From: Octopus sinensis
Lineage: Eukaryota
Direction of reading: 5' to 3'
DNA length: 64,000 nt
Assembly (NCBI RefSeq): GCF_006345805.1
Contig: NC_043017.1
Span: 24,304,001 to 24,368,000, forward strand
The notes beneath the pieces were generated by a model. That model searched no databases. It saw only the letters and a list, made by a program, of their open reading frames with translations, and had not been told where the DNA came from. Of this stretch, positions 15,191 to 57,279 are shown one piece after another; position 1 is the first letter of the stretch; each line of letters begins with the position of its first letter. The position numbers and the translations under genes are program-made.

Positions 15191-15230
<40 letters not shown>

Positions 15231-15568: not shown

Positions 15569-16177
15569 ATATATATGTATATATATTATATGTATATATT
15601 ATATAAACACACACAATTCAAAATTTAATCTTGGGTGAATGCAACATGAAATACAGTTGCCAGTCCCACTTAGAGAGAGAGAGAGAGAGAGAGACAAAAC
15701 TGGCCACCAGTAGAGGTACATAACTTGTCTATTGTTATTTCACAGTACTTCAACTGTAAATGAGAGCATTTAGAGTGAATTGCTGGGGAGGGAAGGGAGA
15801 AAGGAAACAGAATTTATAGCCAGATCGTAAATTCACTTGAACACCAATTGTAACTGGTAGAGTAGCAGGTGGTTTTAGTCATTGGACTGTGATCATGCTA
15901 GTCTACTCCCTCCAAGGGTTTAGCTGGTGCTACATGTGTATGTATATGTATGCATGTGTTTTTATATATATTCGTCTTTTGTTTCTTTCGTGAATTCTCC
16001 CTATATATATATAAAAGGCGGCGAGCTGGCAGACACGTTAGCGTGCCGGGTGGAATGCTTAGCAGTATTTCGTCTGTCGTTACGTTCTGAGTTCAAATTC
16101 CGCCGAGGTCGATGTAATCGACTTAATCCCTTTGTCTGTCCTTGTTTGTCCTCTCTATGTTTAGCCCCTTGTGGGCA

Positions 16178-16574: not shown

Positions 16575-18078
16575 ACAACTCAAATAAATGAACAATAAAA
16601 TTAATAACAAGAGAACATGCAGCAGGAGTGAATTAGCTTGACGCTCAGTAAAAAGAAGAGTTTTTGATGTTTCTAGTATAGATCTTCATAGGAAAGGAGA
16701 AAGAGAAAAGTCCAAAGAAGGAAAAGACATTACCAACAGTACATACGCACACACATATTCATGTGTGTGTGTGTGTGTGTGTGTGTAGGCATGATTGTAA
16801 TTATGAAGTTTGCTTCTTAACTACCTGGTTTCAGTCCCACTGCATGGTATCTAGGGCAAGTGTTTTCTACTAAAGCCCCAGGCTGACCAAAGCCTTACAA
16901 GTCAATTTAGTAGATGGAAACTGAAAGAAGCCCATCATATGTGTGTGTGTGTTAGTGTCTCCTTATCTTGACATCACATAATGGCAGCAAGAACAAGGTA
17001 TGTGGAAAGATGAAGATTTCTATTAGACCAGTGCTCCTCAACCTTTTTTCACTTGTGGTACACTTATGATCTTTTCAAAATTTTGCAGCACACCTGAACT
17101 AAAAATATACACTGTGGCACACCTAGCATCATCTCATGACACACCAGTGTGCCACAGCAAACCGGTTGCGGTGAACCGTTTTGGACTGACGAAATACAGA
17201 CCAACAACAGAAAAGCCAACACAGGAACAAAAACAGAATCATTTGTTCATTTGATGTCTGTTTTTCCTTCCTAAAATGGGTTCAATAAACACGCAGTGAG
17301 ACCTTGTTCTATAGTCGGATGCTCTTACTGTGCAGCTAGCCCTTACCTGTTTTCCAAGAAGTGAATTTTTTTATTTCATTCATCTTCATACATAAGTGCA
17401 GACATGGCCATGTGGTTAAGAAGCTTGCTTCCCAACCATATGGCCTTGGATTCAGTCCCACTGTACAGCACCTTGAGCAACAATAGCCCAGGCTGACCAA
17501 AGCCTTGTGAGTGGATTTAGGAGACAGAAACAAGAAGTCCATTAGGTGTGCGTTTGTGTGATATATAAGGCGGCAAGCTAGAAGAAACATTAGCATGCTA
17601 GACAAAATGCTTAATGGTATTTCGTCTCTACGTTCTGAGTTCAAATTCCGCCGAGGTCGACCTTGCCTTTCATCCTTTTAGAGTCAATTAAACAAGTACC
17701 AGTTACGCACTGGGTCTATGTAATCGACTTAATCCCTTTGTCTGTCCTTGTTTGTTCCCTCCATGTTTAGCCCCTGGTGGGCAATAAAGAGATTAATATA
17801 TGTGTGTGTGAGTTTTTCTGCTTGTCCCCTACAACTGCTTGACAACTGGTGTTGGTTTGTTTATGTTCCTGTAACTTAGTAGTTCAGCAAAAGAGGCTGA
17901 CAGAGTAAGTACCAGGTTTATGAACACTAAGTATCAGGGTCAATTTATTCAGCTAAAGACCGCGTCCCAACATGGCTGCAGTTCAATGATTGCAACAAGT
18001 AAGAGATATATCAACAGACACATAATTACTTACCAAGTCACCTCTATAAAACAGAGAAATGATTAGCTGCAATGCTTA

Positions 18079-20639: not shown

Positions 20640-21525
20640 ACACTAAAATAATAATTATAACACTGAATTGAAGACTAAATATATATAGTGTGTGTGTGTG
20701 TGTGTGAGAGTGTTTTAATTTAAACTAGCACTATGACCCGGCGTTGAATATTATGTAAAGGTATGAATATTATTTCTTTATTGCCCACAAGAGGCTAAAC
20801 ATAAAGGGGACAAACAAAGGGATTAAGTCGATTACATCGGCTCTGGTGCATAACTGGTACTTATTTAATCGACCGCGAAAGGCTGAAAGGCTAAGTTGAC
20901 CTCGACAGAATTTGAACTCAGAATGTAGCTGATGAAATACCACTAAGAATTTCGCCTGGTGTGCTAACGATTCTGCCAGCTCACCAGGGAAAGGCATGAT
21001 TCTGTGCCTGCAAATGCTGTGAAAGTATACTGGAATAAAGTATAAAACCATAAATTTATATCATTAATAAATTATGTTATATGAATACCATATATCAAAT
21101 TTTCTTTCAGATCAACTGCATAATAAGATAAATTATTATACCCGCAGACAAGTTGTGCATCCTTTTGAATGCAGAGCCCCTTAATTTCCATAGGTGGACA
21201 CTGTCCAGGAACTTCCTCTTATTTAACAGCCAGTCAGGCCACCCTGCAGTCGATTATATCGACCCAGTTACTCAATTTGTATTTATTTTATCAACCGAGG
21301 AAGAATGAAAAGCAAAATGAACTCCGGCAGGATCTGAACTGGAAACCCAGAGAGAGATGCAACGTGATACCAACCTATTAATAACAAACAGTAATAACTT
21401 CTAGTTACAAGGCCAAACATTCTGGGATGCAAGAGGGTGGAGTGAAACAGTAAATCAACCTCCATCACTAGCGCATGACAGAGTGCTATTTTATCAAAAC
21501 CCGGCGTGATTTGAACTCGACACAT

Positions 21526-21906
21526 GGAAACACTCCGTCGGTTACGACGATGAGGGTTCCGGTTGATCCGAATCAACGGAACAGCCTGCTCGTGAAATTA
21601 ACGTGGCTGAGCACTCCACAGACACGTGCACCCTTAACGTAGTTCTCGGGGATATTCAGCGTGACACAGAGAGTGACAAGGCCGGCCCCTTGAAATACTG
21701 GTACAACAGAAACAGGAAGTAAGAGTGAGAGAAAGTTGTGGTGAAAGAGTACAGCAGGGTTCACCACCATCCCCTGCTGGAGCCTCGTGGAGCTTTTAGG
21801 TATTTTCGCTCAATAAACACACACACAGCGCCCGGTCTGGGAATCGAAACCGCGATCCTATGACCGCAAGTCCACTGCCCTAACCACTGGGCCATTGCGC
21901 CTCCAC
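21526..21906 (-). mobile_element. tRNA-derived SINE family C (my label), 12-bp TSD
   Basis: Head GTGGAGGCGCAATGGCCCAGTGGTTAG...GTTTCGATTCC; TSD AACTCGACACAT at 21514-21525 and 21907-21918. Confidence 0.9.
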
Positions 21907-30128: not shown

Positions 30129-30519
30129 AATGGATGGAAGCACTCCGTCGGTTACGACGACGAGGGTTCCGGTTGATCCGAATCAACGGAACAGCCTGCT
30201 CGTGAAATTAACGTGTGAGTGGCTGAGCACTCCACAGACACGTGTACCCTTAACGTAGTTCTCGGGGGTATTCAGCGTGACACAGAGAGTGACAAGGCCG
30301 GCCCTTTGAAATACAGGTACAACAGAAACAGGAAGTAAGAGTGAGAGAAAGTTGTGGTGAAAGAGTACAGCAGGGATCACCACCATCCCCTGCTGGAGCC
30401 TCGTGGAGCTTTCGGTGTTTTCGCTCAATAAATACTCACAACGCCCGGTCTGGGAATCGAAACCACGATCCTATGACCGCGAGTCCGCTGCCCTAACTAC
30501 TGGGCCATTGCGCCTCCAC
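30129..30519 (-). mobile_element. SINE family C, 10-bp TSD
   Basis: Highly similar to the 21526 copy; TSD TGTAATCACC at 30119-30128 and 30520-30529. Confidence 0.9.
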
Positions 30520-41027: not shown

Positions 41028-44000
41028 CTTCATTTATCAACAGATTCGAAATTATTCGCGGAGTTCTTACCCCGGTTCAGAAAGTGCTTCTATTAATTTA
41101 GGTCTGGCTGAGGTAATGAAACCAAGGATTTTTGTTTGTGTTACTCTGTGGCATGAAAGTGAAATCGAGATGATGAAACTTCTGAAGTCGATCTTCAGGT
41201 GAGCCTCATTTGAAATTACAAGGATGTCCAACACAAATAGAAGTATGCGCGCGCGTGTGTGTGTGTGTGTGTGTATTAAAAAAGATTAAAATATTTATAC
41301 AAGGTGCAGGAGTGGCTGTGTGGTAAGTAACTTGCTTACCAACCACATGGTTCCGGGTTCAGTCCCACTGCATGGCACCTGGAGCAAGTGTCTTTTACTA
41401 TAGCCTCAGGCAGACCAAAGCCTTGTGAGTGGATTTGGTAGACGGAAACTGAAAAGAAGCCCGTCGTATATATGTATATATGTGAATATATATATATTAT
41501 ATATATATATATATATATATGCATATGTGTGTCTGTGTTTGTCCCCCTAGCATTGCTTGACAACCGATGCTGGTGTGTTTATGTCCCCGTTACTTAGAAG
41601 TTCGGCAAAAGAGACCGATGGAATAAGTACTGGGCTTACAAATGGAATAAGTCCCGGGGTCGAGTTGCTCGATTAAAGGCGGTGCTCCAGCATGGCCGCA
41701 GTCAAATGACTGAAACAAGTAAAAGAGTAAGGGTTATTATAGAGAAATCCTTTTTAATTACATAGATAATCAGTAACTAACAGTTGCTACTAATGCACAG
41801 AAGTAATTCTGTACTAGATTAAAGAGATGTTACTGATTATGGCCAGACATTTTGTCTATTGTCTTACCAGATCTGCTGCTCCACTGGTTTTAACCAGAAC
41901 AGATCTGTTTCCATTCTGTTCCTTATTTTCACATTAATTCTTATAATTAAATTCTTCTGTTTTTATCACAGATTGGACATTGACCAGTGTGCTCGCCGCC
42001 ACGCACGACTGTATTTTGACCTTGTGGATCCAGACTATTATACATTTGAAGGTGACAATTATTGCATTACTTTTAAGGGTTCTCACGTGTTTTCTTTTCT
42101 CTCTCTCTCTCTTATTCACGCCTTTTCTCTTTCTCTCTCTCACCCACTTTTGCATGCACACTGTCTCTCTCTCTCTCCCCTTTTCTCTTTTTATTCGCAC
42201 TCTCTTTTTCTTTCGTTTGCTCTCCCTTTCTCACTCACCTGCTTTCACATGTGCTCTTTCTCGTTTTCGCTCCCTCTTTTTCTTTGCTCTCTGCACTCTC
42301 TCTGTTTTTCACTCACACCTTTTCTCTTTCCCCCTCTCTCTCTCTCTCTCTCTCTTGCCCGCTTTCGCACGCACTCTTTCTCACTTTCGCTCTCTCCTTC
42401 AAACTTGTTCTCTCACTCGCTTAATTATTTTATGAATTATTAACTCCATCAATATTATCAACTGTACAGGAAATATATTTCTAGAATATACCAATTTCTT
42501 TGTTTGAATTCAGTAAAGTTGGTTGCTTACGTATGTGGTTATGGGCATGGCAGATAGCATTCCATTCCTCAGTCTACCTGACTGATAAACAAGTTCCACT
42601 CCGATTTTACTTTTAACTATTAGCAGGAAAGACATCAGACTGTTAAATTAAAAAAAAAAATTTAATTCCAACTAGGTTCAGCCCATATGAGGTCACTCAA
42701 ATCTGTAGTATTGAGCAGAATATTTACTTTAATAACTCTGCTTCAGTATCTCAGCACTGAATCTGTCTCAAATGTAATGGAAAATAGGTCAGTTTCACAA
42801 CATTGATGTTCGTGTCATGAAAGCAAAGTCTGAAGAAAGTAATAGTCATTTCCTTTGATTTCAAATAGGAAATAATGCTTACTGACCAAAAACAAGAAAC
42901 ATAAAAACGATAATGTTATCAAAAATAGTGGTCAAATATTCATTTTTCTGATATATCGATTTAAAAATTTTTTTAACCTCAATTAATGATATTTTTTTCT
43001 AATGAAACATCAATTGATGTCCTCTCACATTTAAGGGTTAAATAAAAAACTCCAACTTCCTTTTACATGTTCTTACAGCTCACCTTATAATAGACGATGC
43101 CTTTGACAAAGATGGCCAGATCAATTATTTTGTTAAGCAATTAATGAGTGTCATGGATTCAGCTCTGAGGTATGTAACAATTATTTAACAATTTTACCTT
43201 AAACAACCTTATAGTCACAGTTGCAGCTAGTGTGTGGTACAGTGCAGTGGTGCAGCTAGTGTGTGTGCAACTGAGGGCAACCCTTCAGTTCACTGCACTC
43301 TTTGCTTCTATACAGGTTTAACCCTTTTGTTACCATATTTCTGTTGAGATGCTCTGTGTTTCTGTCAATTAGTTTTAAATATAACAAAGAATTTAGTAAA
43401 ATAACTTAGTTATCATTAAGCTAATGTTAGGAACATAAATTGTGACTAAGGTTTCGTGGAAGATTTTAATTCAGAACTTATGCAAACAAGACATTTGTAC
43501 TACAGAGCCAGGGGCGGTTTCTGTCGGGTTGATATTGAAAGGGTTAAAAGCATTGCCTAGGCAGACTGCCCTCACCCCTAGCTGCACTAAGGTTTGGTGG
43601 AAGATTTTAATTCAGAGCTTTTGAAAACAAGACATTTGTACTACAGAGCCAGAGGCAGTTTCTGCCGGGTTGATATTGCTTAGGCAGACTGCCCTCACCC
43701 CTACATGCACCACTGGTGAAGTGGGTTACTGACTGTCATCGTGCTCTCTCTCTTTCCATTTATATGAGTGTATATTTGTGTGAGTATGTTTACTTACAGT
43801 ACCACAATGCACTGGCACCGAAATGTCCATTCAGCCCTGCCAAATCACCAGCTTCCAAACAGTTGCACTTTGTTGTCTGAGTGTGCTAGTGCTGAAGGTG
43901 TTAGACTCTTGAGCAGGTCATTTCACTCGGCTCCAAATCTATGTATCTAAAAATGAGTGCCAGGCAAGTGCTGGTACAATCCTCTCTACTCTTCAGCTGT

Positions 44001-46843
44001 CACATTCTCAATATTCTCCCGGGTTAAAACTAGGTTCTGCTTACTAACTACATAGTTAGTCCCCATTACTCTGGAAGTAGCAAAAAGCTAGTTTCCTGGT
44101 TTAAAAAGATATTTCTCACCCCTCAACTTACTCCCAAGGAGATTGTTCTTGTTGTGGACAGACGTCATTTCCTATATGCATGAGATCTCCCAGTGACTTA
44201 TTTTATTGACCCCTAAAGGATGAAATGCAAAGTTGGCCTTGGTGGATTTTGAACTCAGAAGGTAAGCACGAACAAATACCACTAAGCCTTTCACCAGGCA
44301 TGCTAACGATTCTGTCTCACACATTCTCTGAGTGGCTGTGTGGTAAGTAGCTTGCTTACCAACCACATGGTTCCAGGTTCATTCCCACTGCGTGGCACCT
44401 TGGGCAAGTGTCTTCTACTATAGCCTCGGGCCAACCAAAGCCTTGTGAGTGAATTTAGTAGACGGAAACTGAAAGAAGCCCGTCATATATATGTATATAT
44501 ATATATATATATATGTATGTGTATATATGTTGGTGTGTCTGTGTTTGTCCCCCAACACCAGTTTATATTTTTTTGGCAATTTCATTATTCACACACTTAA
44601 CATAGGACAATACAATAAACTGTAAATATTACGTATATAACAAATGTTTGGTGTTATTAAGAAACATTGTTGAAGCACAACTTGTTACTGTTGACTATTT
44701 AACATGTTACTGATAAGACATCATTTGCTGTTATAAAAAAAAAAAAGAGAACAAAAATGAAATGCATGATCATCGATACAGAAATTCATAGACATTTTTC
44801 TTTTATCCAGCTGTGTACATAACATTGTTCTTCGTATGAAACCTCCCACTAAATACGACACTCCTTATGGTGGCCGTTTGGAATGGACTCTTCCAGGTGG
44901 AAATTTGTTCATGATTCACATGAAAAATAAGCACAAGATTCGTAGCAAGAAGAGATGGAGTCAAGTAAGTAATACGACATCCATTGACTCTCATTTTCAC
45001 TAGAACTTGCGATAAACTAACTGTTATGTGTAGTTTGGGTTCTGATGGGATAGACAACCAATATGAAGCCATTGTTATTGTTTTAGGTGTTTATTTACTT
45101 TGCATGTTACACGGACTGTCAACATTCAGCGTAGTGATACATTTATACTTTAGACACAGTTCGTACTGTTCTAACAAAATAGTGCCAAAAGTGGGGATGT
45201 ATTCTACATACGTATACCTGCGTATACACATAGATATAAATGTGTAACACTAACAAACATTGGTTTCATACATTATTAGTAGTATTTTAGTAACTTTACC
45301 TTCTACTTTATAGTGTTTGTTGCATGTTTACTGTGTAAGACTAAATGTTGGACATAAACAGTCACTATGTCTGTTTAAACACTTTCCCGCTCTTCAATGG
45401 CTTGTTTTCTCAGCAGCTTCTGACAATTCTCTGTCCTTTGCAGCTAGTCTGAGACTCCTGAGTATCCAGTGAGCCCTGGTTCCAACAAATCTAACACTTC
45501 TCTCTCCTTTTGAATTATTGATTTGTTTTATTTCTTTGTCTCTCATGTCTGAGTGAAAGAGAAGCAATGTCATGTTGGTAGCATTAGTGACAGAGATAGA
45601 AAGGAAAAAAACACAAGGAAAGGTACTCTTTTACTTGTTTCAGTCATTTGACTGCAGCCATGCTGGAGCACCACCTTTAGTCGAGCAAATCGGCCCCAGG
45701 ACTTATTCATTGGAAGCCTAGTACTTATTCTATCGGCCTCTTTGGCCGAACCGCTAAGTTACGGGGACATAAAAACAACACCATCGGTTACCAAGCGATG
45801 TTGGGGGACAAACACAGACACACCAACATATACACGCACATATATATATATATATGACAGGCTTCTTTCAATTTCCATCTACCAAATCCACTCACAAGGC
45901 TTTGGTCAGCCCAAGGATATAGTAGAAGACATTTGCCCAAGGTGCCACGCAGTGGGAATGAACCTGGAACCATGTGGTTGGTAAGCAAGCTACTTACCAC
46001 ACAGCCACTCAGAGAATGTGTGAGACAGAATCGTTAGCATGCCTGGAGAAAGGCTTAGTGGTGTTTGTCTGTGCTTACCTTCTGAGTTCAAAATCCACCA
46101 AGGCCAACTTTGCATTTCATCCTTTAGGGGTCAATAAAATAAGGATAAGTTAAGGACCAGTTGAGCACTGGGGTTGATGTAATTGACTTAACTACTCTTG
46201 GGCAAGAATATATAAACTACATCGCTCTGCCAAGCCAGTATGGCAGCACAGGCTCATCAAAGTAGTATTATCTGAAGCTCAGATTCAAGGCATGCATATC
46301 AAACCATGGATGGTGGAGAGAACATGCTAAGGCCTTCATCCTGCAGTGAACTGAACATAGGTAATCCGCACACATACACACATGCTCATATATATATATA
46401 CATCATCATCGTTGAACATCTCTTTTTTTCATGCTGGCATTTGAATGATACATGTGAACACACACACACACATACATATGATCAATGTATAATGTCTGCT
46501 TTCCATGGTGGCAAAGGTTTGATGGTATGGTGATCCTATTCTGCCATTTATTCATCAGGGCAAAGGTCTTCTACTATAGTCTCAGGCCAACCAGTCTTGT
46601 GAGTGGATCTGATAGACAGAAACTGAAAGAAGCCCATTACCTGTGTGTATTGTTCAAATTTACAGAAAAAGACAAAAACAGGTGAAGGAACAGCAAGCAG
46701 GTGTATTTGTTTAATGTTCAGGAAACGTCTTTGATGTTTCAAGCCTACACTTCGAGCCTATGCTGACCAAAAGGATTGAGAGGGGCAAAAAAACAAAAAA
46801 CAAAAAAAAACACAATGAAAATATGTGTGTGTGTGTGTGTGTG

Positions 46844-46874
<31 letters not shown>

Positions 46875-48378
46875 CCGTAATAATGAAGGGTGAAATTAAT
46901 TAATTTGGAAAAATTATCAATTACACCAAGTAGTCTTCGGCATGTAAAAGCCTCATTCGAGGAAAATTTAAGTAATACTAAGCAATAAGGTTTAGCAACG
47001 AGTTGCCTTACCACATACCGAATTTAGAAATAGCAGTCAAAGGGTTATAGCTATTTCTTCTACTAAAAAGGGAGATCTCAGTAAAAACAGCATTTGGAAG
47101 GCACAAACAGGTAAGAGAGAATGAATTGACTGCAATCTATCATACATTTTTTTAAAAAAATGTATGATAGATTGCAGTCATTCATTCTCTCTTACCTGTT
47201 TGTGCCTTCCAAATGCTGTTTTTACTGAGATCTCCCTTTTTAGTAGAAGAAATAGCTATAACCCTTTGACTGCTATTTCTAAATTCGGTATGTGGTAAGG
47301 CAACTCGTTGCTAAACCCTTATTGCTTAGTATATATATATATATATATAATTATATAAAGTGAAAGTCAAAAGCACAGTTAGACAGCTTTTTAATCACTA
47401 CAAATGTTTCAATATATATAAATCCATGTATATATAGGATTTAAAGTTAATTTTGAATTTAAATGAAATTATGTAAACGATTTTCACACAAATACCTATT
47501 TCTTTACTACCCACAAGGGGCTAAACACAGAGAGGGCAAACAAACGGATTAAGTCGATTATATCGACCCCAGTGCGTAACTGGTACTTATTTAATCGACC
47601 CCGAAAGGATGAAAGGCAAAATCGACCTCGGTGGAATGTGAACTCAGAACGTAACGGCAGACGAAATACGGCTACGCATTTCGCCCGGCTTGTTCAATTA
47701 TGGATCACGGTCAAAGGGAGACAATCCCTTGTTGACATAACGAAGACTTTTCCTCCCCCCATTTTCTAGAGATACCTATTTCTTTACTACCCACAAGGGG
47801 CTAAACACAGAGGGGACAAACAAGGACAGACAAACGGATTAAGTCGATTATATCGACACCAGTGCGTAACTGGTACTTAATTTGTCGACTCCGAAAGGAT
47901 GAAAGGCAAAGTCGACATCTTTTCACACAAATACCCAAAACTAGAATTGGTAGCCTACCATAATAATACATAATACTACCGCCCATTTGGGAATTCTAAG
48001 GGTGAACAAGCTCTGTTTGTACTAATACGCTCTTAACAGCACACACATCAATTATATATATATATATATAGGTGCAGGCATGGCTGAGGTGAAAAACTTG
48101 CTTCCTAACCACATGGTTCTGGGTTCAGACTCCAATGTCTCTCTCTCACTCTTTCTATTATATATAAATATATATATTAAATTAGAGATAAAACCACTAT
48201 TAGGCAAATCAAACAGTGAAAATCATAAACCAATACATAGAAATAAAATTAATTAATAAAAAATATATAAAATATAAAATTCAAAATTTAAAATATATAA
48301 AATATATTAATTTTATTTCTATGTATTGGTTTATGATTTTCACTGTTTGATTTGCCTAATAGTGGTTTTTATCTCTAA

Positions 48379-48414
<36 letters not shown>

Positions 48415-51400
48415 TATAAAATTAGATTTAATCCTAAATCTAATTTTTCCATGTAAGTTTGGATTTACTCCCTAATATTATTATTATAAATAAATAAATA
48501 TATATATATATATATATATGTCCCGGATGAACCAACTTCACGGCAGGTGGTGCAGATGAGGGCAGCTGCATTGAACTCTCTCATGCACCAAATGGCAGTT
48601 GCTAAAAAGCATTCGTGAAGTAAAATCATGTAGCAACACCAAATGGCAGTGCCCCAGCATGGCCACAGCTCGTGAGCTGAAACTAGATAAAATAAAAAAT
48701 AAAAATATATATGAGTGGCTGTGTGGTAAGTAGCTTGCTAACCAACCACATGGTTCCGCGTTCAGTCCCACTGCGTGGCATCTTGGGCAAGTGTCTTCTG
48801 CTATAGCCCCGGGCCGACCAATGCCTTGTGAGTGGATTTGGTAGACGGAAACTGAAAGAAGCCCGTCGTATATATATATATATATATATATGTATATGTG
48901 TGTATGTGTGTGTGTTTGTCAACCTAGCATTGCTTGACAACCGATGCTGGGGTGTTTACATCCCCGTCACTTAGCGGTTCGGCAAAAGAGACCGATATAA
49001 TAAGTACTGGGCTTACAATGAATAAGTCCCGGGGTCTATTTGCTCGATTAAATGTGGTGCTCCAGCATGGCCACAGTCAAATGACTGAAACAAGTAAAAG
49101 AGTAAAAAGAGTATATATATCTCTGCACATGCCACCAAGCAATTTGTATTATATTTGAATGTTACAGGTGATGTATATGTACTGGATCCTTGGTTACCGC
49201 ATCATGTCCATTGATGGCCCAGTCCATCTGAAACGGTCAATTGCCGAGAACACTTACTTGCTTACTTTGGATGGTGATATTGAATTTCATCCTCCATCCT
49301 TTCTAAAACTACTCGATCGAATGAAAAAGGATCCTCGTGTTGGTGCAGCATGCGGTAGAATCCACCCTGTTGGCTCTGGTAAGCTCCTTTATTAAAGTAG
49401 CCTTCTGGGACAGGATTTTCTAGAATATTTCTTCCGTACATTTTTATATTCTTTAGTCCTGTCTCTCTCTCTCTCTCTCTCTCTTTCACTCGTCCTGTCT
49501 CTCTCTCTCTCTCTTTCACTCGTCCTGTCTCTCTCTCTCTTTCACTCGTCCTGTCTCTCTCTCTCTTCCACTCGTCCTGTCTCTCTTTCTCTCCTTCATC
49601 CGCTCTCTCACCTGTCCCATCTCTCTCCTCTCTTTCCTTTGTCTACCTGGTAAAAAGAAAATCATCCCTTTTAGGTCCTCTGATCTGGTACCAGAAATTT
49701 GAATACGCCATCAGCCACTGGTTACAGAAATCTGCCGAACACGTGATGGGTTGTGTCCTGTGCAGTCCAGGTTGTTTTAGTCTGTTCCGTGGCTCAGCAC
49801 TGATGGATGACAATATTCTCAGCACCTACACCAGTCTCTCAAGTCAACCCATTGACTACTTGCAAAAAGATCAAGGTAACTTTGTTCTACTGTTATCATT
49901 CTCCCTCTTTCTTTGACTACAAAACATGAGACATACCTTAACAACAAATAATATCTTGTAGCTTTGGTTCAATGCAAATAAATTTAATAGGAGAATAATT
50001 AATTTAATAGACCCTATTTTTTTTACTTGTTTCAGTCATTAGATAGCGGCCATGCTGGAGCACCGCTTTTAGTCGAAGAAATCGAACCCCAGGACTTACT
50101 CTTTGTAAGTCTAGTACTTATTCTATCAGTCTCTTTTGTCGAGCTGCTAAGTTTTGCTGACATAAATACACCAACACTGGTTGTCAAGCAATGGTGGGGA
50201 AACAAACACAAAGATATACACACACACACACACACACACATACATACATACACACACACACACACACGACGGGTTTCTTTCAGTTTCTGTTCTATCAAAT
50301 CCACTCACAAGGCTTTAGCAGAAGACACTCGCCCAAGGTGCCACACGATGGGACTGAATCCCAAACCATGTGGTTGGGAAGCATGTTTCTTACCACACAG
50401 CCATGCCTGCACCTATATATATATATATATTTTCATTGTGTTTTTTTTTTTTGTCCCTCACAATCCTTTTGGTCAAAAAGCGTAGGCTCAAAACATCTTG
50501 GCAAGATTCTAACTTAAAATGTCTAGCAGGATGGCCATGTGGTAAGGAGCTCACTTTGCAACCAGATGGTTTTATGTTTAGTCCCACTCACAAGGCCTTG
50601 GTCAGCCCAGGATTATAGTAGAATACAATTGCCCAGGGTGCCACACAGCGGGATTGAACCTAAAATTACATACTTAGGAAGGAAACTTCTTAACCCATTC
50701 ACAAGGCTTTAGAGAGCCCAGTGCTGTAGTAGAAGGCGCTTGCTCAGGGTGCCATACAGCAGGATTGAACCCAAGACCACATACTTAGGTAGGAAACTTA
50801 ATCCCACCCACAAGGCTTTAGTCAGCCTGGGGTTATAGTAGAAGACACTTGCCTAGGGTGCCACACAGTGGGACTGAACCTAAAATTATGTACTTAGGAA
50901 GGTAACTTCTTAACCACAAAGCCACACCTGTATGCAGTAATTAATTCATCTTAATTATGAAAATTAAATGAATTTATTAAATTTAGGTCTGACACCTTTA
51001 GAACCTTACATGTCTTTTTTTTGTTTTTGTTAATTATTGTATCAATTAAAATTTTTTAAAAAATGGAAAATTCCAATTCAGGTGAAGATCGCTGGTTGAG
51101 CACACTTTTACTGAAGCGGGGTTACCGTGTGGAATACTGTGCCGCAGCAGATGCTATGACCTTTGCCCCTGAAGGTTTCAAAGAGTTCTTCAATCAAAGA
51201 CGACGTTGGATGCCATCAACTCTGGCCAATATGTATGACATTCTGAGCGACTGGAGAACTGTGGTGAAACAAAACAACAGCATCTCGTTAATCTACCTGA
51301 TGTACCAAGCAGCATTGATGGCTATATCGTTTATCTCACCTGGCACGATATTTGTACTGCTGGTTGGTGCCATCAACAGAGCTTTCCCAGCTTTATCTTT

Positions 51401-51534
51401 GACATCAACATTCTTACTGAACTTAGTCCCAATTGTAATAATGATATTGTTGTGTAAATACGCTTCAACAGATACACAGGTAAGTCCTTCTACCTGTTCT
51501 TTCCATACATGACAATGCACATGCATGTTTGTGC

Positions 51535-51565: not shown

Positions 51566-54500
51566 CCAACCAATTGTGGCCATTTGCCAGCCTCCTCTGG
51601 CCCCTGTGCTGGTGGCACGTAAAAAGCACCCACTACACTCACGGAGTGGTTGGCGTTAGGAAGGGCATCAAGCTGTAGAAACGCTGTCAGATCAGACTGG
51701 AGCCTGGTACAGCCTCCTGGCTTCCCAGACCCCGGTCGAACTGTCCAACCCATGCTAGCATGGAAAACGTACGTTAAACGATGATGATGATGATATATCT
51801 GTATGTATGTATATATATACATATATACACACACACACATATACATCATCATTGTTTAACGTTCTTCTTCCATGCTGGCATGGGTTGGGTGGTTTGACAG
51901 GTGGTCAGGCAGGAGCCTGCATCATGCTTATGTGTCTGTTTTAACATGGTTCCTATGGCTGGATGCTCCTTCCTAATGCCATCCATTCCACGGAGTGAGC
52001 CAAGTGCTTTTTATATGGCACTTAACACATTTGGTAGGAGTTGCAAATATTTATATGTTTGACTGAGTTCCATGTGACTTTAAGCTTCATGGGCTCATAG
52101 GATGAATTCACCTCAGCAGATATCTGTAGAACGGTCATATACAGCTGAGTCATACTGGCATCGAAATATAGTTAAACACAATTCAGGTAAAAGCTTTGTC
52201 TGCTCTGCAAAGCTCGTCTGTAGTTGCTGGCTACCTCATGTCAACATAGTGGAAACCGGTACTGCTACTGGATATGCATGAGGAATTCCATAGTATCTGT
52301 AGAGTTCATATACATAGATAAATGACAGAAAATGGAACAAATGACAGTCCTTATTTAAAAATCATTACAATTGTTTTGACAAGTTTTTACACTTGTAGTA
52401 CATTGGTGAAATATTGTGTAATCATTTAAATAGATTCTATTGTCATTTCACTCAGTACTCTCTCTCTCTTTTACTTGTTTCAGTCATTTGACTGCAGCCA
52501 TGCTGGAGCACCGCCTTTAATCGAGCAACTCGACCCCGGGACTTATTCTTTGTAAGCCCAGTACTTATTCTATCGGTCTCTTTTGCCGAACCGCTAAGTG
52601 ACGGGGACATAAACACACTGGCATCGGTTGTCAAGCAATGCTAGGGGGACAAACACAGACACACAAACACACATATACATATACATACATATATACGACG
52701 GGCTTTTTCAGTTTCCGTCTACCAAATCCACTCACAATGCTTTGGTCGGCCCGGGGCTATAGTAGAAGACACTTGCCAAAGGTGCCACGCAGTGGGACTG
52801 AACCCGGAACCATGTGGTTGGTAAGCAAGCTACTTACCACACAGCCACTCCTACACCTTAGTGTGAGAATAAAATGACAACAGGATCTAACAAATGACTT
52901 ATTTAACCCTTTTACATTTAACCCAGGCATATCTCCATCAATAGATTTTGCCTGACCCATGCAAGCATGGAATAGGGGACATTCAATGACAATGGTGCCA
53001 ATGAGTACATTACTGTTCCCTCTTCTCCTTTCAGTTGAACTTTGCAATAATCTTAACGATGATCTACACCGTTGTCATGATGACCGTCTTAGCAGGACTC
53101 TGCCTGGAGATTGCTGGTTCTTTGTTCTGTTCAACAACAACGATATTTGCAACTTTGGTCTTCATGGCATTTGTTTCCGCTGCACTTCTGCATCCGCAAG
53201 AGTTTTCAGCTATCTTTGGAGGGTTTGTGTTCCTTTTGGCAGTACCAACCATGTCCATCATTTTGGTAATCTATGCCATGGGAAATTTGCATATTGTATC
53301 CTGGGGTACTCGTGAAGTGGTGCAACAAAACTCGAAAGTACTTTCAGCTGATGGCAACCATGACGTGTCTTCAAGTGGAGTGTCTTTCTCGGCACTTTCT
53401 CCAGTGAGTAAAACAATTCGAAAGAAATTTCAAAGGTATGTTTTATTTTTAAATTTAAAAAGTTATAATTAACCCTTTAGATACCAACACGCCTGAGAGC
53501 GCCCCTGATTCTGAAACAAAGTTCAGGCTTTAAAGTGGTCTAAATTAAAAGCTTCCATCAGTTTAATTAATGCCCCAAACACCAGGTTAACAATGGCAAA
53601 ATTATTTTACTAAATTCATTATTTTCAAAATCAATTGAAATAAAGTTGGTGTATTTCAACAGTGACAAAAGGAAGATGATGAGCGAGCAGAATAATTAGG
53701 AAGACAAGCAAAATGCTTAGAAGCATTTCATCTATCTTTATATTCTGAGCTCAAATTCTGCCGAGGTCAACTTTGCCTTTTATAGTTTTGGGGTAATTGA
53801 AATAAGTACCAGTTGAGCACTGGAACTGACGCAATCAACTTACTCCGTCCCCCAAAGTTGCTGGCCTTGTGTCCAAATTAGAAGGCTGGTGAATTGACAG
53901 TCAGTCATTAGAGCATTGGACAAAAGCACCATGCTATAAACACTTGCAATTCTTTGTTCTGAGTTCAAATTCTATCAAGGCCACCATCCCCAAATTGCTG
54001 GCCTTGTGTCAAAATTTGAAATCAACATTAGAAGGTCAGTAAATGGCAGAAGCAACAAAGCTTCCCACAAAATGCCATCTGGCGTTTAGTTATTCCTCTT
54101 GATATTCTGAGTTCAAAACCTGCTACTGTCAGTTATGTATTTATCCTTTCAGGGGCTCAATAAAATGAGTTCTTTAAACGTCCAGATATTGCCTTTATTG
54201 AACTCATAAAGCAAAATATGCTGAATATGCTCCTTTGTCACTTCCATTATAGCTTTGAAAAAATAGCTGTTAAAATCAAACTGCACTTTTCAAAACTTGC
54301 ACTAAGAATAAGTACATGGTAAAATGACTACCTGCTTTTATAGCAAGTCGATGCAGGTAGTTTATCCTGTCCCCTTCCGACTTTTAGTTTATGCAATTGA
54401 GAAAAACCGTATTATTTATGGGATGACCCAATATATAATTATTTTTTGGGGGTTGTTTGTATGCGTGTTTCTGTCTCTTTCAACATATAGACAATGCAAA

Positions 54501-57279
54501 ACAGACTTTAAATAAAAGACGTTCATGTTGAACAATTTATAATGGTAAGTGTCTGATTAACAAACATTTTTACCAGTTGCATAGTGATGGGTAACGACCT
54601 AATCTTCTGTAACAAACATTCCTGGCCTTCAGGAAGGACATTTGGCCATAGAAAATCTGCTTAACCCTTTAGTGTTCGCATTATTCTGCCAAAATTAATC
54701 CTTTTTTATCTAAATTGTTTTGAACTAATCATGCATCATCTTGTAGCTATGAGATTTCAATGAGGTAGGTGTTAATTTTTAAAATGATATTGTAGGGTTT
54801 GTGTGAGAGACCAGATCTGGCCAGTCTGACCATAAAACAGGCAGAATACTTTTGGCCGGATATGGCCAGTTTAAATGCTAAAGGGTTAAATGAATTCTAT
54901 TTTCCTCATGCAAACATGAAACGATGGACTTTGAAACAATGCTTATATTTCAAAAGCTTATTTATGTCCTGTCCACAGCTTCATCAACGCCATTCGAAAA
55001 TGTTTCCAGAAATCCACACCAGAACAATGCGATGTTCAACATCAAGAAATTTTGACACGCATCCAAGAACTAGAATCCAAACTGAACAAACTTACAAACC
55101 AACAAAAACATGAAAAGCCATCTTGCACATTGGAGTCGGTTGGCTTTCAAGAAATTAGTATGTAACTTAATGAATTTTTTCTTTGTTATGGTTATTCCAG
55201 CAATAATGTTAAATATCTACTAAAAAATAGATTTGTTTTAATAAACTTGACATAATCATCATTTAACGTCCATTTTCCATGCTGGCATGGATTGGACGGT
55301 TTGATAGGAGCTGCACTGACAAAAAATAGTTCCAAATATGACATTCCTCAACAAAAAGTAGATTGGTGTATAAAAGTGCTTTCTACAGTTAAGGATAATG
55401 AAATTTTGAGTGGACATATCTGATTTCCTCAGTAAACGGGTTAATTGACTTGAAGACTATATGCAAGATTTGAACAGTGGGTAACAAAGCCATATTTTGA
55501 TACTACATGTTTCCGAGTTCAAATTTTGTTTGCTCTCGACACTATCCTTTCGCTCTAAGATCCCTGAAAATTAAGGGGATTTGAGAGGCAACATTCCATA
55601 TAGATTGTGGGCTATTGTTGTTTAGCCCCAGGCAAATTTTGACTGATCAGATCTATGATCATACATATTCTAGTCATGTCCAACTTTTCTTTGTAAGTAT
55701 ATCAGGGACTACATTGTTCAATGTGTCCTGTCATTTTTAAAAAGACATGGAGTTGTTCGAGGTAAATTTAGCTGCTATTTCTAAAGGCAACAACATCAGT
55801 TTTGTGAAATCCCTATTTCTTAGCAAGCTGCATTCACTTTAGCTGTTCGAAGTTTGTTTCCCAACGACATAGTTACAGATCAGTTCTGCTGCATGGAAAC
55901 TTGGGCAGATACCTTCCACTATAGCCTCAGGTCAACTAAAGCCTTGCAAGTGGCTTTGCTAAATGGAAACTGAAAGAAGCACACTGTGTGTGTGTGCATG
56001 CACATGCTTGTGTCTCCTTACCTTGACATCACCTAATAGGTTTGTCATCAGGTAGGGTATCTAGCTAATACAAAACTCTTCCACACTGTAAACTCATCTG
56101 ACCCATGCAAGCATTGAAAAATAGAAGTTAAAACAATGAAGATGGCATAGCTAAATTACTAAATTTATCTAATCTCCCCAATAAATATGATTTGTTTTTA
56201 ATTATTTTTTTTTGTTTCCTTTTTGCCAAGGTACTGAAAATAATGCCAACCCCAACATTACTGTCAATCCAAACCACTGGTGTGATGATGAAGTCCTCGG
56301 CCAAAGTGAAATAGCTCACATCTCACTACAAGAGTCAAAGTTTTGGAAGGACTTCATTCACAAATATCTGCTACCTTTAAAAAGTAATCCCGAAGCCCAG
56401 AAGCAAAAAAGATTCAGCCTAGAAAGACTTCGGAATAAACTGGCCACATTGTACCTGTTAGCTAACATGTCATTTATTTTGTTGGTATTGTCTCTTGAGA
56501 ATAGCAGCTTTTCTAACGACAAGCTCACATTCTTGATCTCTTGTAATTTCAAAGATGTTACCTACGATAAAGTTCGACCTCTCTCGGTTATATTTGTAAT
56601 AGTGTTTGGGGTGATACTCATTTGCCAAATGTTAGCAATGCTTTTCCATCGTGCGTTGACCATTATCCATATCATAGCATCAATAGACCTAAACATCGGC
56701 CATCCATGGCAAAAGAAAGCGCAGTCTAACACTCTACAATTGATTCGTGACATGCAACGGCTGGATAAGCAAGTAGTTGAGACCGATTCCATACTAACAA
56801 CAGAAGACTGCCAGGAACCAAGCAGTGACAATTATCTGAATCTGGAACATAAAAGACAACCGGAATGGGTTAACCGCCTTGACAACAACCAAACAACATG
56901 TAGTTCTTTAGAAGGCCATTTTAAAGAGAATTTCTATAGAATAGCCAGCAGGACTTTTGCGAAAAGTAAATCAGAACAAGTAATATATAAACAAAGATCA
57001 GTTGGACACCATGTAACCTCTCTTCCTGTTCTTGAACGAAACACAAAGAACAACAGGCAGATACGAAAATGCAACTCAGCTGCTCGACAAATCATTGAAC
57101 ACGGCAGATGGAATCCAGAATCCACTGAATGGAATGAACCGAAAATGAATAATATTCATTCAAATAAACCCAACACGAATACCAATCATCACAGCCAAGG
57201 CAGCCATTTTTCTTTATTTGCAACTGATTCAACACATTCCACTACAGAAAAACAGTTCTTGCAAGAAACATCTGTATAG
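34838..57279 (+). CDS. CHS: Chitin synthase (GT2, metazoan type), 14 coding exons, ~1491 aa, no myosin head seen
   Basis: Manual splicing of the 14 exons below gives 4476 nt in one frame. Motifs in order: WDVF, ERLASSEKLF, CVTLWHES, TPYGGRL, KKRWSQ, LDGD, WYQKFEYAISHW, CSPGCFSLFR, QKDQGEDRW, QRRRW, SWGTRE, QMLAMLFHR. Confidence 0.96.
35806..36205 (+). CDS. CHS: CHS exon 2 (MCPVVWDVF...TNTFLW)
   Basis: Acceptor tttcgtttcAG, donor TGG|GTGAGT; WDVF motif and TM segments. Confidence 0.9.
36305..37130 (-). mobile_element. RTE-clade LINE 3' relic in CHS intron 2
   Basis: KCYIVPVALYWAETW..EKQINDFEMCVFRRLGRMSWKDR..IKSTKLSYF; (TGA)n tail. Confidence 0.8.
37440..38347 (+). CDS. CHS: CHS exon 3 (N-terminal TM region, ...ERLASSEK)
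   Basis: 303-aa ORF; acceptor gttttAG, donor AA|GTAAGA. Confidence 0.93.
39522..39621 (+). CDS. CHS: CHS exon 4 (LFVKPMYCAINLEQFLFLNKRRND...)
   Basis: Acceptor tatttccAG, donor AGT|GTAAGA; resembles the CHS LFxxPxYxxxxxxQxLxLNRR segment. Confidence 0.9.
41044..41198 (+). CDS. CHS: CHS exon 5 (...PRIFVCVTLWHESEIEMMKLLKSIFR)
   Basis: CATMWHET-like motif; donor AG|GTGAGC. Acceptor atcaacAG chosen because it keeps phase 0. Confidence 0.88.
41303..41730 (+). mobile_element. SINE family A (CHS intron 5)
   Basis: Full-length copy. Confidence 0.9.
41972..42051 (+). CDS. CHS: CHS exon 6 (LDIDQCARRHARLYFDLVDPDYYTFE)
   Basis: Acceptor ttatcacAG, donor G|GTGACA; DPDYY motif. Confidence 0.92.
42088..42420. 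repeat. Degenerate (CT)n polypyrimidine tract, CHS intron 6
   Basis: Seen directly. Confidence 0.9.
43079..43169 (+). CDS. CHS: CHS exon 7 (AHLIIDDAF...MDSAL)
   Basis: Acceptor ttcttacAG, donor AG|GTATGT; DDAF motif. Confidence 0.92.
43245..43715. mobile_element. Small TIR element (Harbinger-like ends) with a nested piggyBac MITE and a local duplication
   Basis: CAGTGGTGCAGCTAG ... CTACATGCACCACTG. Confidence 0.5.
44330..44557 (+). mobile_element. SINE family A, 5' half (CHS intron 7)
   Basis: Joined head-to-head to a SINE B relic. Confidence 0.88.
44811..44964 (+). CDS. CHS: CHS exon 8 (...TPYGGRLEWTLPGG...KIRSKKRWSQ)
   Basis: Acceptor ttttatccAG, donor CAA|GTAAGT. Confidence 0.96.
45625..46010 (-). 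mobile_element. SINE family A (CHS intron 8)
   Basis: Full-length; joined head-to-head to a SINE B relic. Confidence 0.9.
46975..47332. repeat. 358-bp spacerless palindrome in CHS intron 8
   Basis: Centre T7/A7 at 47153/47154; arms differ by two 1-nt indels. Confidence 0.95.
47481..47935 (-). mobile_element. Two SINE B copies plus a ~75 bp spacer inside one direct repeat
   Basis: TTTTCACACAAATACC at 47481-47496 and 47920-47935. Confidence 0.75.
48177..48383. repeat. Fold-back element, ~76-bp arms, AT-rich spacer, TA-flanked
   Basis: TTAAATTAGAGATAAAACCACTATTAGG... and its reverse complement. Confidence 0.9.
48712..49110 (+). mobile_element. SINE family A (CHS intron 8)
   Basis: Near full-length copy. 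Confidence 0.9.
49168..49378 (+). CDS. CHS: CHS exon 9 (VMYMYWILG...LLTLDGDIEF...AACGRIHPVGS)
   Basis: Acceptor gttacAG, donor G|GTAAGC; DxD motif. Confidence 0.97.
49675..49875 (+). CDS. CHS: CHS exon 10 (PLIWYQKFEYAISHW...CSPGCFSLFR...QKDQ)
   Basis: Acceptor cccttttAG, donor G|GTAACT. Confidence 0.97.
50030..50412 (-). mobile_element. SINE family A, older copy (CHS intron 10)
   Basis: Diverged full-length copy. Confidence 0.85.
50583..50932 (-). repeat. Three tandem ~110-bp copies of a SINE A head
   Basis: Units start at 50583, 50694 and 50803. Confidence 0.85.
51082..51479 (+). CDS. CHS: CHS exon 11 (EDRW...QRRRWMPSTLAN...)
   Basis: Catalytic EDR and QRRRW motifs; donor CAG|GTAAGT. Confidence 0.98.
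52455..52850 (-). mobile_element. SINE family A (CHS intron 11)
   Basis: Full-length copy. Confidence 0.9.
53035..53435 (+). CDS. CHS: CHS exon 12 (TM helices, LHPQEF, SWGTRE)
   Basis: Acceptor ctcctttcAG, donor AG|GTATGT (phase 2). Confidence 0.93.
54979..55157 (+). CDS. CHS: CHS exon 13 (predicted coiled coil, EILTRIQELESKLNKL)
   Basis: Acceptor gtccacAG, donor A|GTATGT; bridges phase 2 to phase 1. Confidence 0.8.
56231..57279 (+). CDS. CHS: CHS exon 14 (terminal; TM helices, QMLAMLFHR, stop TAG)
   Basis: 355-aa ORF; acceptor tttttgccAAG. Confidence 0.92.

What the first reader, a model, noticed from the sequence alone, without database searches (positions are those of the whole stretch)
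44197..46143. Homogenised ~350-bp inverted composite repeat brackets CHS exon 8
Seen: intron 7 (44197-44557) and intron 8 (45799-46143) carry the same head-to-head SINE B/SINE A junction in opposite orientation. Two blocks are perfectly complementary: 114 bp (44294-44407 vs 45933-46046) and 72 bp (44198-44269 vs 46071-46142). I counted about 14 substitutions overall. The arms share private variants absent from other copies (CCAGGTTCATTCCC, the TCTCACACATTCTCT junction, a heavily diverged B core), so these are not two independent insertions. Inference: an inverted duplication or gene conversion. In pre-mRNA it would form a long stem looping out ~1.24 kb containing exon 8 (TPYGGRL/KRWSQ; 154 nt, frameshifting if skipped). 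The left arm also holds two strong cryptic donors (AAG|GTAAGC at 44262, TG|GTAAGT at 44343) that the stem could mask. Established: coleoids edit RNA heavily via ADAR, and inverted SINE pairs drive editing and back-splicing in other animals.
Basis: partly seen in the sequence, partly recalled or inferred. Interest (0 to 1): 0.7.

Follow-up and report, generated by a model that had tools for sequence, protein, structure and literature searches.

The report
Inverted SINE-pair duplication flanking chitin-synthase exon
A roughly 350-bp piece made of two abutting SINE retroposons was copied in reverse orientation to the other side of a chitin-synthase exon, giving a pair that should fold into a long double-stranded RNA stem; the repeat is real, but it is an ordinary kind of feature in this SINE-packed genome and no effect on the gene could be tested.

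Summary
The inverted repeat is real. Arms 44197-44557 and 45799-46143 align with 329 matches, 16 substitutions and 16 gapped microsatellite bases. There are perfect blocks of 73 and 114 nt. The arms lie in the introns on either side of a 154-nt chitin-synthase exon (44811-44964).

The right arm sits inside a larger composite: a full-length ~390-bp SINE A head-to-head with an older SINE B. The left arm is an inverted copy of an internal segment of that composite. It shares the same junction and the same SINE B start, and SINE A is cut off at its 3' end exactly where homology stops. The SINE B part proves common descent: 96.6% between arms against 81% or less to any other copy, with 22 shared derived changes. 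The SINE A part does not: 93.3% between arms, no closer than to unrelated copies.

The best reading is a local inverted duplication, roughly 3-7 My old, possibly with later patchy gene conversion.

The predicted RNA stem is 331 bp (-618 kcal/mol) and survives in the fold of the 6.3-kb exon 7-9 interval. However, this window holds 43 SINE A hits and several comparable inverted pairs. Editing, back-splicing and genome-wide uniqueness could not be tested. Interest is low to moderate.

The parts
44197..44557 (.). Left arm of the inverted repeat, in the intron upstream of the 154-nt exon. It ends 253 nt before that exon's 3' splice site.
   Evidence: 329 matches, 16 substitutions and 16 gapped bases against the reverse complement of 45799-46143
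44191..44315 (-). SINE B fragment within the left arm, antisense to the gene (profile positions 22-157). It has a 10-nt deletion near its 3' end.
   Evidence: nhmmer with a profile built from 10 other SINE B copies in the window, E=1.4e-27
44315..44329 (.). 15-nt junction TCTCACACATTCTCT between the two SINE heads. It aligns weakly to the diverged 5' head of SINE B.
   Evidence: found only in the two arms
44330..44558 (+). 5' part of SINE A in the left arm, sense to the gene (profile positions 1-217 of 390). It is 3'-truncated exactly where the inverted repeat ends.
   Evidence: nhmmer with a profile built from 11 other SINE A copies, E=1.3e-69
44408..44523 (.). Divergent patch holding 12 of the 16 substitutions and the microsatellite indels. 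It includes four CpGs that decayed in one or both arms.
44811..44964 (+). 154-nt chitin-synthase exon (CVHNIVLRMKPPTKYDTPYGGRLEWTLPGGNLFMIHMKNKHKIRSKKRWSQ), looped out by the predicted stem.
45799..46143 (.). Right arm of the inverted repeat, in the downstream intron. It starts 835 nt after the exon's donor site.
45627..46010 (-). Full-length SINE A (profile positions 1-389), antisense to the gene. Only its 5' 212 nt belong to the repeat; the 3' 172 nt (45627-45798) have no counterpart on the left.
   Evidence: nhmmer E=2e-123; blastn
46025..46196 (+). SINE B (profile positions 22-183), sense to the gene. It continues about 50 nt beyond the repeat boundary and carries an 11-nt insertion at 46144-46154.
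   Evidence: nhmmer E=2.2e-37
44190..44194 (+). CCAGT directly outside the left arm (part of CCCAGTG, 44189-44195). It repeats at 44558-44562 and also matches CACTGGG at 46166-46172 in the donor. Candidate microhomology or 5-bp target-site duplication.
   Evidence: read directly from the sequence; nhmmer extends the SINE B alignment to 44191
44558..44562 (+). Second CCAGT, immediately after the inner end of the left arm.
43079..43169 (+). Upstream chitin-synthase exon (HLIIDDAFDKDGQINYFVKQLMSVMDSAL).
49168..49378 (+). Downstream chitin-synthase exon (VMYMYWILGYRIM...CGRIHPVGS).
48713..49101 (+). Full-length sense SINE A in the same intron as the right arm, ending 66 nt before the next exon. 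It is the main competing pairing partner for the right arm.
   Evidence: 346 intermolecular bp and net -341 kcal/mol, against -403 for the left arm

Best explanation
The feature is a local, DNA-level inverted partial duplication of a pre-existing SINE composite.

Proposed history (inferred):
1. An old SINE B, about 20% diverged from its family and with its CpGs largely decayed, sat in the intron downstream of the 154-nt chitin-synthase exon.
2. A young, full-length SINE A later landed head-to-head against it.
3. A segment of about 345-375 bp spanning that junction was then copied in reverse orientation into the upstream intron, 1.24 kb away. The likely route is replication template switching or break-repair synthesis that ended at short microhomologies (CCAGT / CCCAGTG).
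4. The copies have since diverged by about 4.6%, mostly transitions and about a third at CpG sites. This suggests an age of roughly 3-7 My.
5. The differences cluster in one 116-nt patch. Either that patch mutates faster, or the rest was re-homogenised by gene conversion between the arms.

Expected behaviour in the pre-mRNA (inferred): the two arms are the best and nearest partners for each other and should form a 331-bp duplex that loops out the exon. The most likely consequence is heavy A-to-I editing of both arms by ADAR, as is usual for octopus intronic hairpins. At most there would be low-level circularisation or skipping of the exon. The structure is probably selectively neutral.

Shown here: the repeat, its anatomy, shared descent of the arms, the direction of copying (right arm is the donor-like copy) and the thermodynamic preference for pairing. 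Inferred: the mechanism of copying, the age and every RNA-level effect.
For: - Repeat and perfect blocks.
- Anatomy: the right arm is full-length SINE A (profile 1-389) plus SINE B (22-183). The left arm is SINE A 1-217 plus SINE B 22-157, with the same B start and the same 15-nt junction.
- The donor continues as bona fide SINE sequence beyond both ends of the copy. The left flanks show no SINE homology and are unique in the window.
- SINE B part: 22 shared derived changes against 3-4 private ones, and 96.6% L-R identity against 81% or less to any of 7 other copies.
- SINE A part: private shared variants at CCAGGTTCATTCCC and, at the innermost end, TTGG and CCCCCAACA. The whole left arm is therefore co-derived with the right.
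- No other junction-spanning hit among the 43 SINE A and 21 SINE B hits in the window.
- Substitution spectrum: 14 of 16 are transitions and 7 fall at CpG-type sites.
- Clustering: the chance of a perfect run of 114 nt or more is about 0.02 under uniform or CpG-weighted placement, and about 0.003 with family-variability weights.
- Age: Jukes-Cantor distance 0.048, which gives about 6.6 My at the octopus repeat clock of JC 0.09 = 25 My (PMC13282606).
- RNA: cofold -618 kcal/mol with 331 intermolecular pairs. The same 331 pairs appear in the minimum-energy folds of the 1.9-kb, 2.4-kb and 6.3-kb contexts.
- Literature: octopus has exceptionally abundant hyper-editing linked to nearby inverted repeats (PMC5625713). 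Octopus editing is mostly in intronic and 3'UTR hairpins, and circRNAs are low overall (PMC9699675).
Against: - No second genome, no reads and no RNA data could be reached, so the empty site, the assembly and all RNA effects are unverified.
- The SINE A half alone does not show that L and R are each other's closest relatives: 93.3% between arms against up to 95.2% to an unrelated copy.
- Other 3'-truncated SINE A copies exist in the window, for example 2063-2255 ending at profile position 224. Truncation alone is therefore not diagnostic.
- The microhomologies are short (5-7 nt). One lies across a 22-nt/1-nt indel, so it could be chance.
- The right arm has competitors of similar strength: net -341 and -349 kcal/mol, against -403 for the left arm.
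Confidence: 0.72

Rival explanations
1. RNA-mediated origin. A fragment of the sense pre-mRNA, or another read-through transcript covering the right-hand composite, was reverse-transcribed by a LINE enzyme. Priming was on the A-rich stretch AATAAAATAAG, the copy was 5'-truncated inside SINE A, and it was inserted antisense in the upstream intron with a 5-bp target-site duplication (CCAGT).
For: The copy's outer end is the A-rich AATAAAATAAG. Its other end is a truncation, as expected for target-primed reverse transcription. CCAGT directly follows the inner end and lies 2 nt outside the outer end. LINEs are abundant and active in octopus (PMC13282606).
Against: There is no poly(A) or SINE/LINE 3' tail. 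The 5-bp repeat is offset by 2 nt and could be chance, with roughly 1-2% probability by my estimate. The same CCAGT/CACTGG also occurs in the donor just beyond the copied segment (46166-46172), which fits microhomology-mediated DNA copying equally well. Retrocopies rarely land 1.2 kb from their source.
Confidence: 0.12
2. The B/A head-to-head composite is a dispersed repeat unit, for example part of a larger DNA transposon or a segmentally amplified block. The two arms would then be independent copies that happen to flank the exon.
For: Octopus genomes hold hundreds of unclassified SINE families and many composites (PMC13282606). Only 64 kb could be searched here.
Against: The junction occurs nowhere else among the 43 SINE A and 21 SINE B hits in the window. 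In a head-to-head arrangement, neither element's own transcript would be expected to cross the junction (an inference from general SINE biology, not tested), so the pair is unlikely to spread as a SINE. The right copy continues as a complete SINE A and a longer SINE B, as expected for the original site of two separate insertions. The SINE B part is old and CpG-depleted, unlike an active master copy.
Confidence: 0.07
3. Two independent pairs of SINE insertions were later made alike purely by gene conversion between inverted copies, with no duplication step.
For: The substitutions are significantly clustered, leaving perfect tracts of 73 and 114 nt. Gene conversion between nearby inverted repeats is well established (general knowledge).
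Against: Conversion needs pre-existing homology on both sides. Here it would have to recreate the same junction, the same SINE B start and 22 SINE B substitutions. No lower-identity SINE homology continues outside the left arm on either side. The left SINE A lacks its 3' 172 nt, which an independent retroposition would have carried.
Confidence: 0.05
4. Assembly artefact: a spurious inverted copy created during assembly of a repeat-dense region.
For: The region is packed with near-identical SINEs. A second, perfect 352-nt palindrome lies 850 nt away. No reads were available.
Against: The arms differ at 16 substitutions and in microsatellite length. They are separated by 1.24 kb of unique sequence that holds a correctly oriented, in-frame, conserved exon with good splice sites. 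Fold-back artefacts normally give identical arms with no spacer.
Confidence: 0.03

Closest known systems
Inverted Alu pairs (IRAlus) flanking exons in primate genes, which are ADAR substrates and promote exon circularisation (general knowledge; principle restated in PMC5625713)
   Same: Two copies of the same SINE lie in opposite orientation in the introns on either side of an exon, within about 2 kb. They are predicted to form a long, near-perfect intramolecular duplex. Competing partners inside the same intron are present, as in the competition model for circRNA formation.
   Different: The arms here are not two independent retropositions. One is a partial inverted DNA copy of a two-SINE composite. 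The SINE families are octopod-specific. No editing or back-splice data exist for this site, and octopus circRNA levels are reported to be low overall (PMC9699675).
Local inverted duplications produced by replication template switching or microhomology-mediated break-induced replication (general knowledge)
   Same: A contiguous donor segment, including a unique junction, is copied in inverted orientation close to the donor. The donor extends beyond the copy at both ends. Short matches of 5-7 nt lie at the breakpoints.
   Different: Classical short template switches copy tens of bases over tens to hundreds of bases. Here about 350 bp were copied 1.2-1.9 kb away. The microhomology evidence is weak and the mechanism cannot be shown from a single genome.
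Arm-to-arm gene conversion in genomic palindromes and inverted repeats (general knowledge)
   Same: Long perfect tracts sit beside a divergent patch, a mosaic that conversion can produce.
   Different: With only two sequences and 16 differences, the divergent patch also coincides with the CpG-rich, microsatellite-adjacent part of SINE A. Conversion is suggested, not demonstrated.

Membership tests
Exon-flanking inverted SINE pair (IRAlu-like dsRNA former) | Two copies of the same repeat in opposite orientation within one transcription unit | tested here: met
   SINE A is sense at 44330-44558 and antisense at 45627-46010. SINE B is antisense at 44191-44315 and sense at 46025-46196. All lie within chitin-synthase introns on the + strand.
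Exon-flanking inverted SINE pair (IRAlu-like dsRNA former) | Arms lie in the two introns that flank an exon, within a few kb | tested here: met
   The left arm ends 253 nt before the exon's 3' splice site. The right arm starts 835 nt after the donor site. The loop is 1241 nt.
Exon-flanking inverted SINE pair (IRAlu-like dsRNA former) | Long stable intramolecular duplex, preferred over alternative partners | tested here: met
   331 bp and -618 kcal/mol. The stem is retained in the minimum-energy fold of 6.3 kb. Net -403 kcal/mol against -341 and -349 for the best competitors. This is prediction only.
Exon-flanking inverted SINE pair (IRAlu-like dsRNA former) | A-to-I hyper-editing of the arms, or back-splice reads | not testable with these tools
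   No RNA-seq access.
Independent SINE retroposition (for the left arm) | Element retains its 3' tail and is bounded by target-site duplications | tested here: not met
   The left SINE A stops at profile position 217 of 390 with no tail. The left SINE B stops at position 157 of 242. No clean duplication flanks either module.
Local inverted segmental duplication | The copy includes a unique junction from the donor, and the donor extends beyond the copy at both ends | tested here: met
   The 27-nt junction is identical and occurs only twice in the window. The donor continues 172 nt (SINE A) and about 50 nt (SINE B) beyond the copy.
Local inverted segmental duplication | Microhomology or other repair signature at the breakpoints | tested here: inconclusive
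   CCAGT occurs at 44190-44194 and 44558-44562. CCCAGTG matches the donor at 46166-46172 across a 22-nt/1-nt indel. The matches are too short to be decisive.
Local inverted segmental duplication | Empty site in related genomes | not testable with these tools
   No octopod orthologue was found: the best protein hits were 70% and 67% identical, three exact look-ups were empty, and two metagenome scans were empty, including the SINE A positive control.
Gene conversion between inverted repeats | Mosaic of identical tracts and divergent patches beyond what uniform decay gives | tested here: inconclusive
   The chance of a perfect run of 114 nt or more is 0.02 under uniform or CpG-weighted placement and 0.003 with family-variability weights. 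The test is post hoc, and the divergent patch is the CpG-rich, microsatellite-adjacent segment.
Transposon bounded by terminal inverted repeats | Inverted termini bound a mobile unit that occurs in several copies with target-site duplications | tested here: not met
   The interior holds a conserved, in-frame chitin-synthase exon. No second copy of the unit or its flanks is in the window.
Chitin synthase gene (Pfam PF03142) | Significant match to the family profile, including the QRRRW region | tested here: met
   Chitin_synth_2 at E=1.3e-26, 93.8 bits against a cutoff of 27. Exon-level homologues share the same ...KKRWSQ|V exon end.

The most novel reading that the evidence does not exclude
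The arms are kept alike by recurrent gene conversion because the stem has a function. In this reading, an editing-sensitive dsRNA clamp around a frame-shifting exon switches the chitin-synthase transcript between the productive mRNA and an exon-skipped form (immediate stop codon, probable decay) or a 154-nt circular RNA. This would link ADAR activity to chitin-synthase dosage.
Probability: 0.04. Interest if true: 0.55.

Novelty: new member of a known kind. Interest (0 to 1): 0.25.

Why it matters
If the stem forms in vivo, this is a clean, datable example from an octopod of how a small inverted duplication, rather than two chance retropositions, creates an exon-bracketing dsRNA. Such a site could be used to ask whether cephalopod ADAR suppresses circularisation at a defined locus. 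As it stands it mainly illustrates how densely SINE-laden octopus introns generate long hairpins. That is already the accepted explanation for the very high non-coding editing in octopus (PMC5625713).

Tried and rejected
**Searches for an orthologous or allelic copy to find the empty site**
- Protein search with the 51-aa exon peptide: best hit 70% identical, all short ORFs from other animals.
- Protein search with the 149-aa QRRRW exon: best hit 67% identical, no octopod orthologue.
- Three exact look-ups of ORFs lying between the arms: none on record.

**Genome-wide frequency of the junction**
- Metagenome scan for the 23-nt junction: 0 hits.
- Positive control scan for the SINE A head: also 0 hits. 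The collection holds no octopus DNA, so the result is uninformative.

**Other checks that led nowhere**
- Joined left flanks against the window, looking for an intact 'empty site' paralogue: the flanks are unique.
- CpG hypermutability or family-level site variability as a full explanation for the mismatch clustering: not sufficient.
- Rfam and ARAGORN on 43000-49500: no tRNA or RNA family call on the SINE heads, only sub-threshold generic hairpin hits. 'tRNA-derived' therefore rests on my recollection of octopus SINEs, not on a test.
- Full-text search for the SINE sequences, to find published names: 0 papers. One paper look-up was wasted because 'sine' matched 'sinensis'.

**Hypothesis rejected**
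- I considered that the left SINE A was an independent insertion later partly overwritten from the right. The innermost 34 nt are identical and carry private variants shared only with the right arm, so this does not hold.
Full report

Yes. The repeat finder reports arms 44197-44522 and 45818-46143 (326 nt, 93% complementary), plus an extension to 44557 / 45799.

A global alignment of 44197-44557 with the reverse complement of 45799-46143 gives 329 matches, 16 substitutions and 16 gapped bases. All gaps fall in the (TA/TG)n microsatellite. Perfect blocks of 73 nt (44197-44269) and 114 nt (44294-44407) are present. Its count of about 14 substitutions is slightly low.

The 27-nt junction is found only in the two arms, with 0 expected by chance at up to 3 mismatches.

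**2. Gene context**

The + strand carries chitin-synthase exons. Three of them were delimited:
- 43079-43169 (91 nt)
- 44811-44964 (154 nt)
- 49168-49378 (211 nt)

These have canonical AG/GT borders and splice into one open frame...HLIIDDAFD...DSALSCVHNIVLRMKPPTKYDTPYGGRLEW...KKRWSQVMYMYWILG....

The concatenated exons match Pfam Chitin_synth_2 at E=1.3e-26. Exon-level homologues from other animals end at the same KKRWSQ|V boundary.

Skipping the 154-nt exon gives ...DSALR followed directly by a stop codon.

The left arm lies in the 1641-nt upstream intron and ends 253 nt before the acceptor. The right arm lies in the 4203-nt downstream intron and starts 835 nt after the donor. I did not verify that the exon is number 8.

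**3. Anatomy of the arms**

I built profiles from the other copies in the window and ran nhmmer. The window holds 43 SINE A and 21 SINE B hits.

| Arm | SINE A | SINE B |
|---|---|---|
| Right | full-length, profile 1-389, 45627-46010, antisense | profile 22-183, 46025-46196, sense |
| Left | profile 1-217, 44330-44558, sense | profile 22-157, 44315-44191, antisense |

On the right, the two heads are separated by 15 nt that align weakly to the diverged SINE B head. The left arm has the same SINE B start and the identical 15-nt junction.

Homology between the arms stops inside both SINEs. The right copy continues for 172 nt of SINE A tail and about 50 nt of SINE B. The left flanks show no SINE homology and are unique in the window. 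The left arm is therefore a partial, inverted copy of an internal segment of the right-hand composite.

**4. Common descent, and where the evidence for it lies**

- **SINE B half.** 22 substitutions away from the family consensus are shared by both arms, and only 3-4 are private. L-R identity is 96.6%, against 81% or less to any of seven other SINE B copies. This half, together with the identical junction, is decisive.
- **SINE A half.** This half is much less informative. Over the 165-nt head the arms are 93.3% identical, yet the left arm is 95.2% identical to an unrelated copy at 2745-3108. It is 94.5% identical to two others. SINE A is a young family whose members are all alike.
- **Private shared variants in SINE A.** They do exist: A and T in CCAGGTTCATTCCC, and TTGG and CCCCCAACA at the innermost end. 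The whole left arm is therefore co-derived with the right. I rejected the idea that the left SINE A was an independent insertion that was partly overwritten.
- **3' truncation.** This is not diagnostic on its own, because other truncated SINE A copies occur in the window.

**5. Pattern of differences**

14 of the 16 substitutions are transitions, and 7 lie at CpG-type sites. One ancestral CpG has decayed independently on opposite strands in the two arms (CCAACC against CTGACC).

Twelve substitutions and all indels fall within 44408-44523. The rest of the repeat is about 98% identical.

| Placement model | Chance of a perfect run of 114 nt or more |
|---|---|
| Uniform | about 0.02 |
| CpG-weighted | about 0.02 |
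| Weighted by family-level site variability | about 0.003 |

The test is post hoc and rests on 16 events. Patchy gene conversion after the duplication is plausible but not shown.

The overall Jukes-Cantor distance is 0.048. With the published octopus repeat clock (JC 0.09 = 25 My; PMC13282606) this gives about 6.6 My. Using only the low-divergence parts gives about 3 My.

**6. Mechanism of origin**

In a head-to-head arrangement, neither SINE's own transcript would be expected to cross the junction (inferred from general SINE biology, not tested). If so, the composite cannot have moved as a SINE.

The breakpoints show CCAGT directly after the inner end (44558-44562) and 2 nt outside the outer end (44190-44194). 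CCCAGTG at 44189-44195 also matches CACTGGG at 46166-46172 in the donor, across a 22-nt/1-nt indel.

This fits microhomology-mediated template switching or break repair. It also fits, less well, a 5'-truncated retrocopy of a read-through transcript primed on the A-rich AATAAAATAAG with a 5-bp target-site duplication. One genome cannot separate these.

An assembly artefact is unlikely. The arms differ at 16 sites and are separated by unique sequence with a correctly oriented exon.

**7. Predicted behaviour in RNA**

- Cofolding the arms gives -618 kcal/mol with 331 intermolecular pairs.
- The same 331 pairs appear in the minimum-energy structures of 44197-46143, 44000-46400 and the full 6.3-kb exon 7-exon 9 interval.
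- The right arm has serious competitors. A full-length sense SINE A at 48713-49101, in the same intron and ending 66 nt before the next exon, gives net -341 kcal/mol. Another at 41310-41726 gives net -349. The left arm gives -403.
- The left arm is transcribed first and is closest, so L-R pairing should win.

Published work shows that octopus has an exceptionally high load of hyper-editing tied to nearby inverted repeats (PMC5625713). In octopus, editing sits mostly in intronic and 3'UTR hairpins, while circRNAs are low overall, attributed to repression by ADAR (PMC9699675).

The likeliest outcome is therefore heavy editing of the arms with little effect on splicing. None of this could be tested here.

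**8. The 'cryptic donors'**

Both motifs are present.
- GGTAAGTAGC is part of the SINE A consensus. It occurs in sense orientation at five sites in the window, including 48725 in the same intron, so it is not special to this arm.
- AAGGTAAGC is private to the two arms. It arose in the old SINE B before the duplication and is in sense orientation only on the left.
- Masking by the stem is speculation.

**9. How unusual is it?**

Not very. Within this 64-kb window there are 19 inverted pairs of at least 150 nt lying within 6 kb of each other. They include:
- 2063-2255 / 2909-3105: 94.9% over 197 nt, 654 nt apart.
- 48710-49113 / 52456-52853: 90.8% over 404 nt, bracketing three chitin-synthase exons.
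- 1437-1819 / 5703-6109: 88.7% over 407 nt.

What sets the present pair apart is its origin as a local inverted copy of a two-SINE junction, and the fact that it brackets a single frame-shifting exon.

**10. Verdict**

It is right on common origin and stem potential. It overstates 'homogenisation' of the SINE A half and one of the two donors. It is untested on function.

This is a new member of a known kind, an exon-flanking inverted SINE pair, with a somewhat unusual origin. Interest is low to moderate.

Noticed in passing
window 46978-47329: A 352-nt near-perfect palindrome lies in the same intron, about 850 nt downstream of the right arm. Aligned to its own reverse complement it gives 350 matches, 0 mismatches and 4 gap columns. 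It is flanked by TA on both sides and has no other copy in the window. The RNA fold of the central 163 nt is -134.8 kcal/mol (z = -27). Rfam gives only sub-threshold hits to many miRNA-precursor models on both strands. It looks like a very young fold-back or TA-targeting MITE-like element, or else an assembly artefact.
   Followed up: partly
window 48710-49113 and 52456-52853: A second long inverted SINE A pair (404 nt, 90.8% identical, 3.3 kb apart) brackets the three chitin-synthase exons that encode the catalytic core (about 49168-51490). It is another candidate dsRNA or circularisation clamp in the same gene.
   Followed up: no
window 48713-49101: A full-length sense SINE A ends only 66 nt upstream of the acceptor of the exon starting at 49168. 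It carries the consensus GGTAAGT donor-like motif at 48725.
   Followed up: no
window 11520-15605: An approximately 2.05-kb tandem duplication (11520-13590 against 13555-15605, 98% identical) lies in a region rich in (TA)n-type simple repeats.
   Followed up: no
window 17405-18005: Nested insertion: a SINE B (17563-17798) sits inside the microsatellite of a SINE A that is split into 17405-17560 and 17788-18005. The microsatellite may be an insertion hot spot.
   Followed up: no
window 16803-16960, 55849-56013 and other short SINE A-like copies: Several older copies share the SINE A head and core but continue with a different tail (CTCCTTAYCTTGACATCAC...) instead of the usual 3' half. This suggests that the 390-bp SINE A is a modular element related to another SINE family.
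   Followed up: no
window 21524-21906 and 30134-30519: A direct repeat of about 385 nt at 93.6% identity belongs to neither SINE A nor SINE B. The repeat family was not identified.
   Followed up: no
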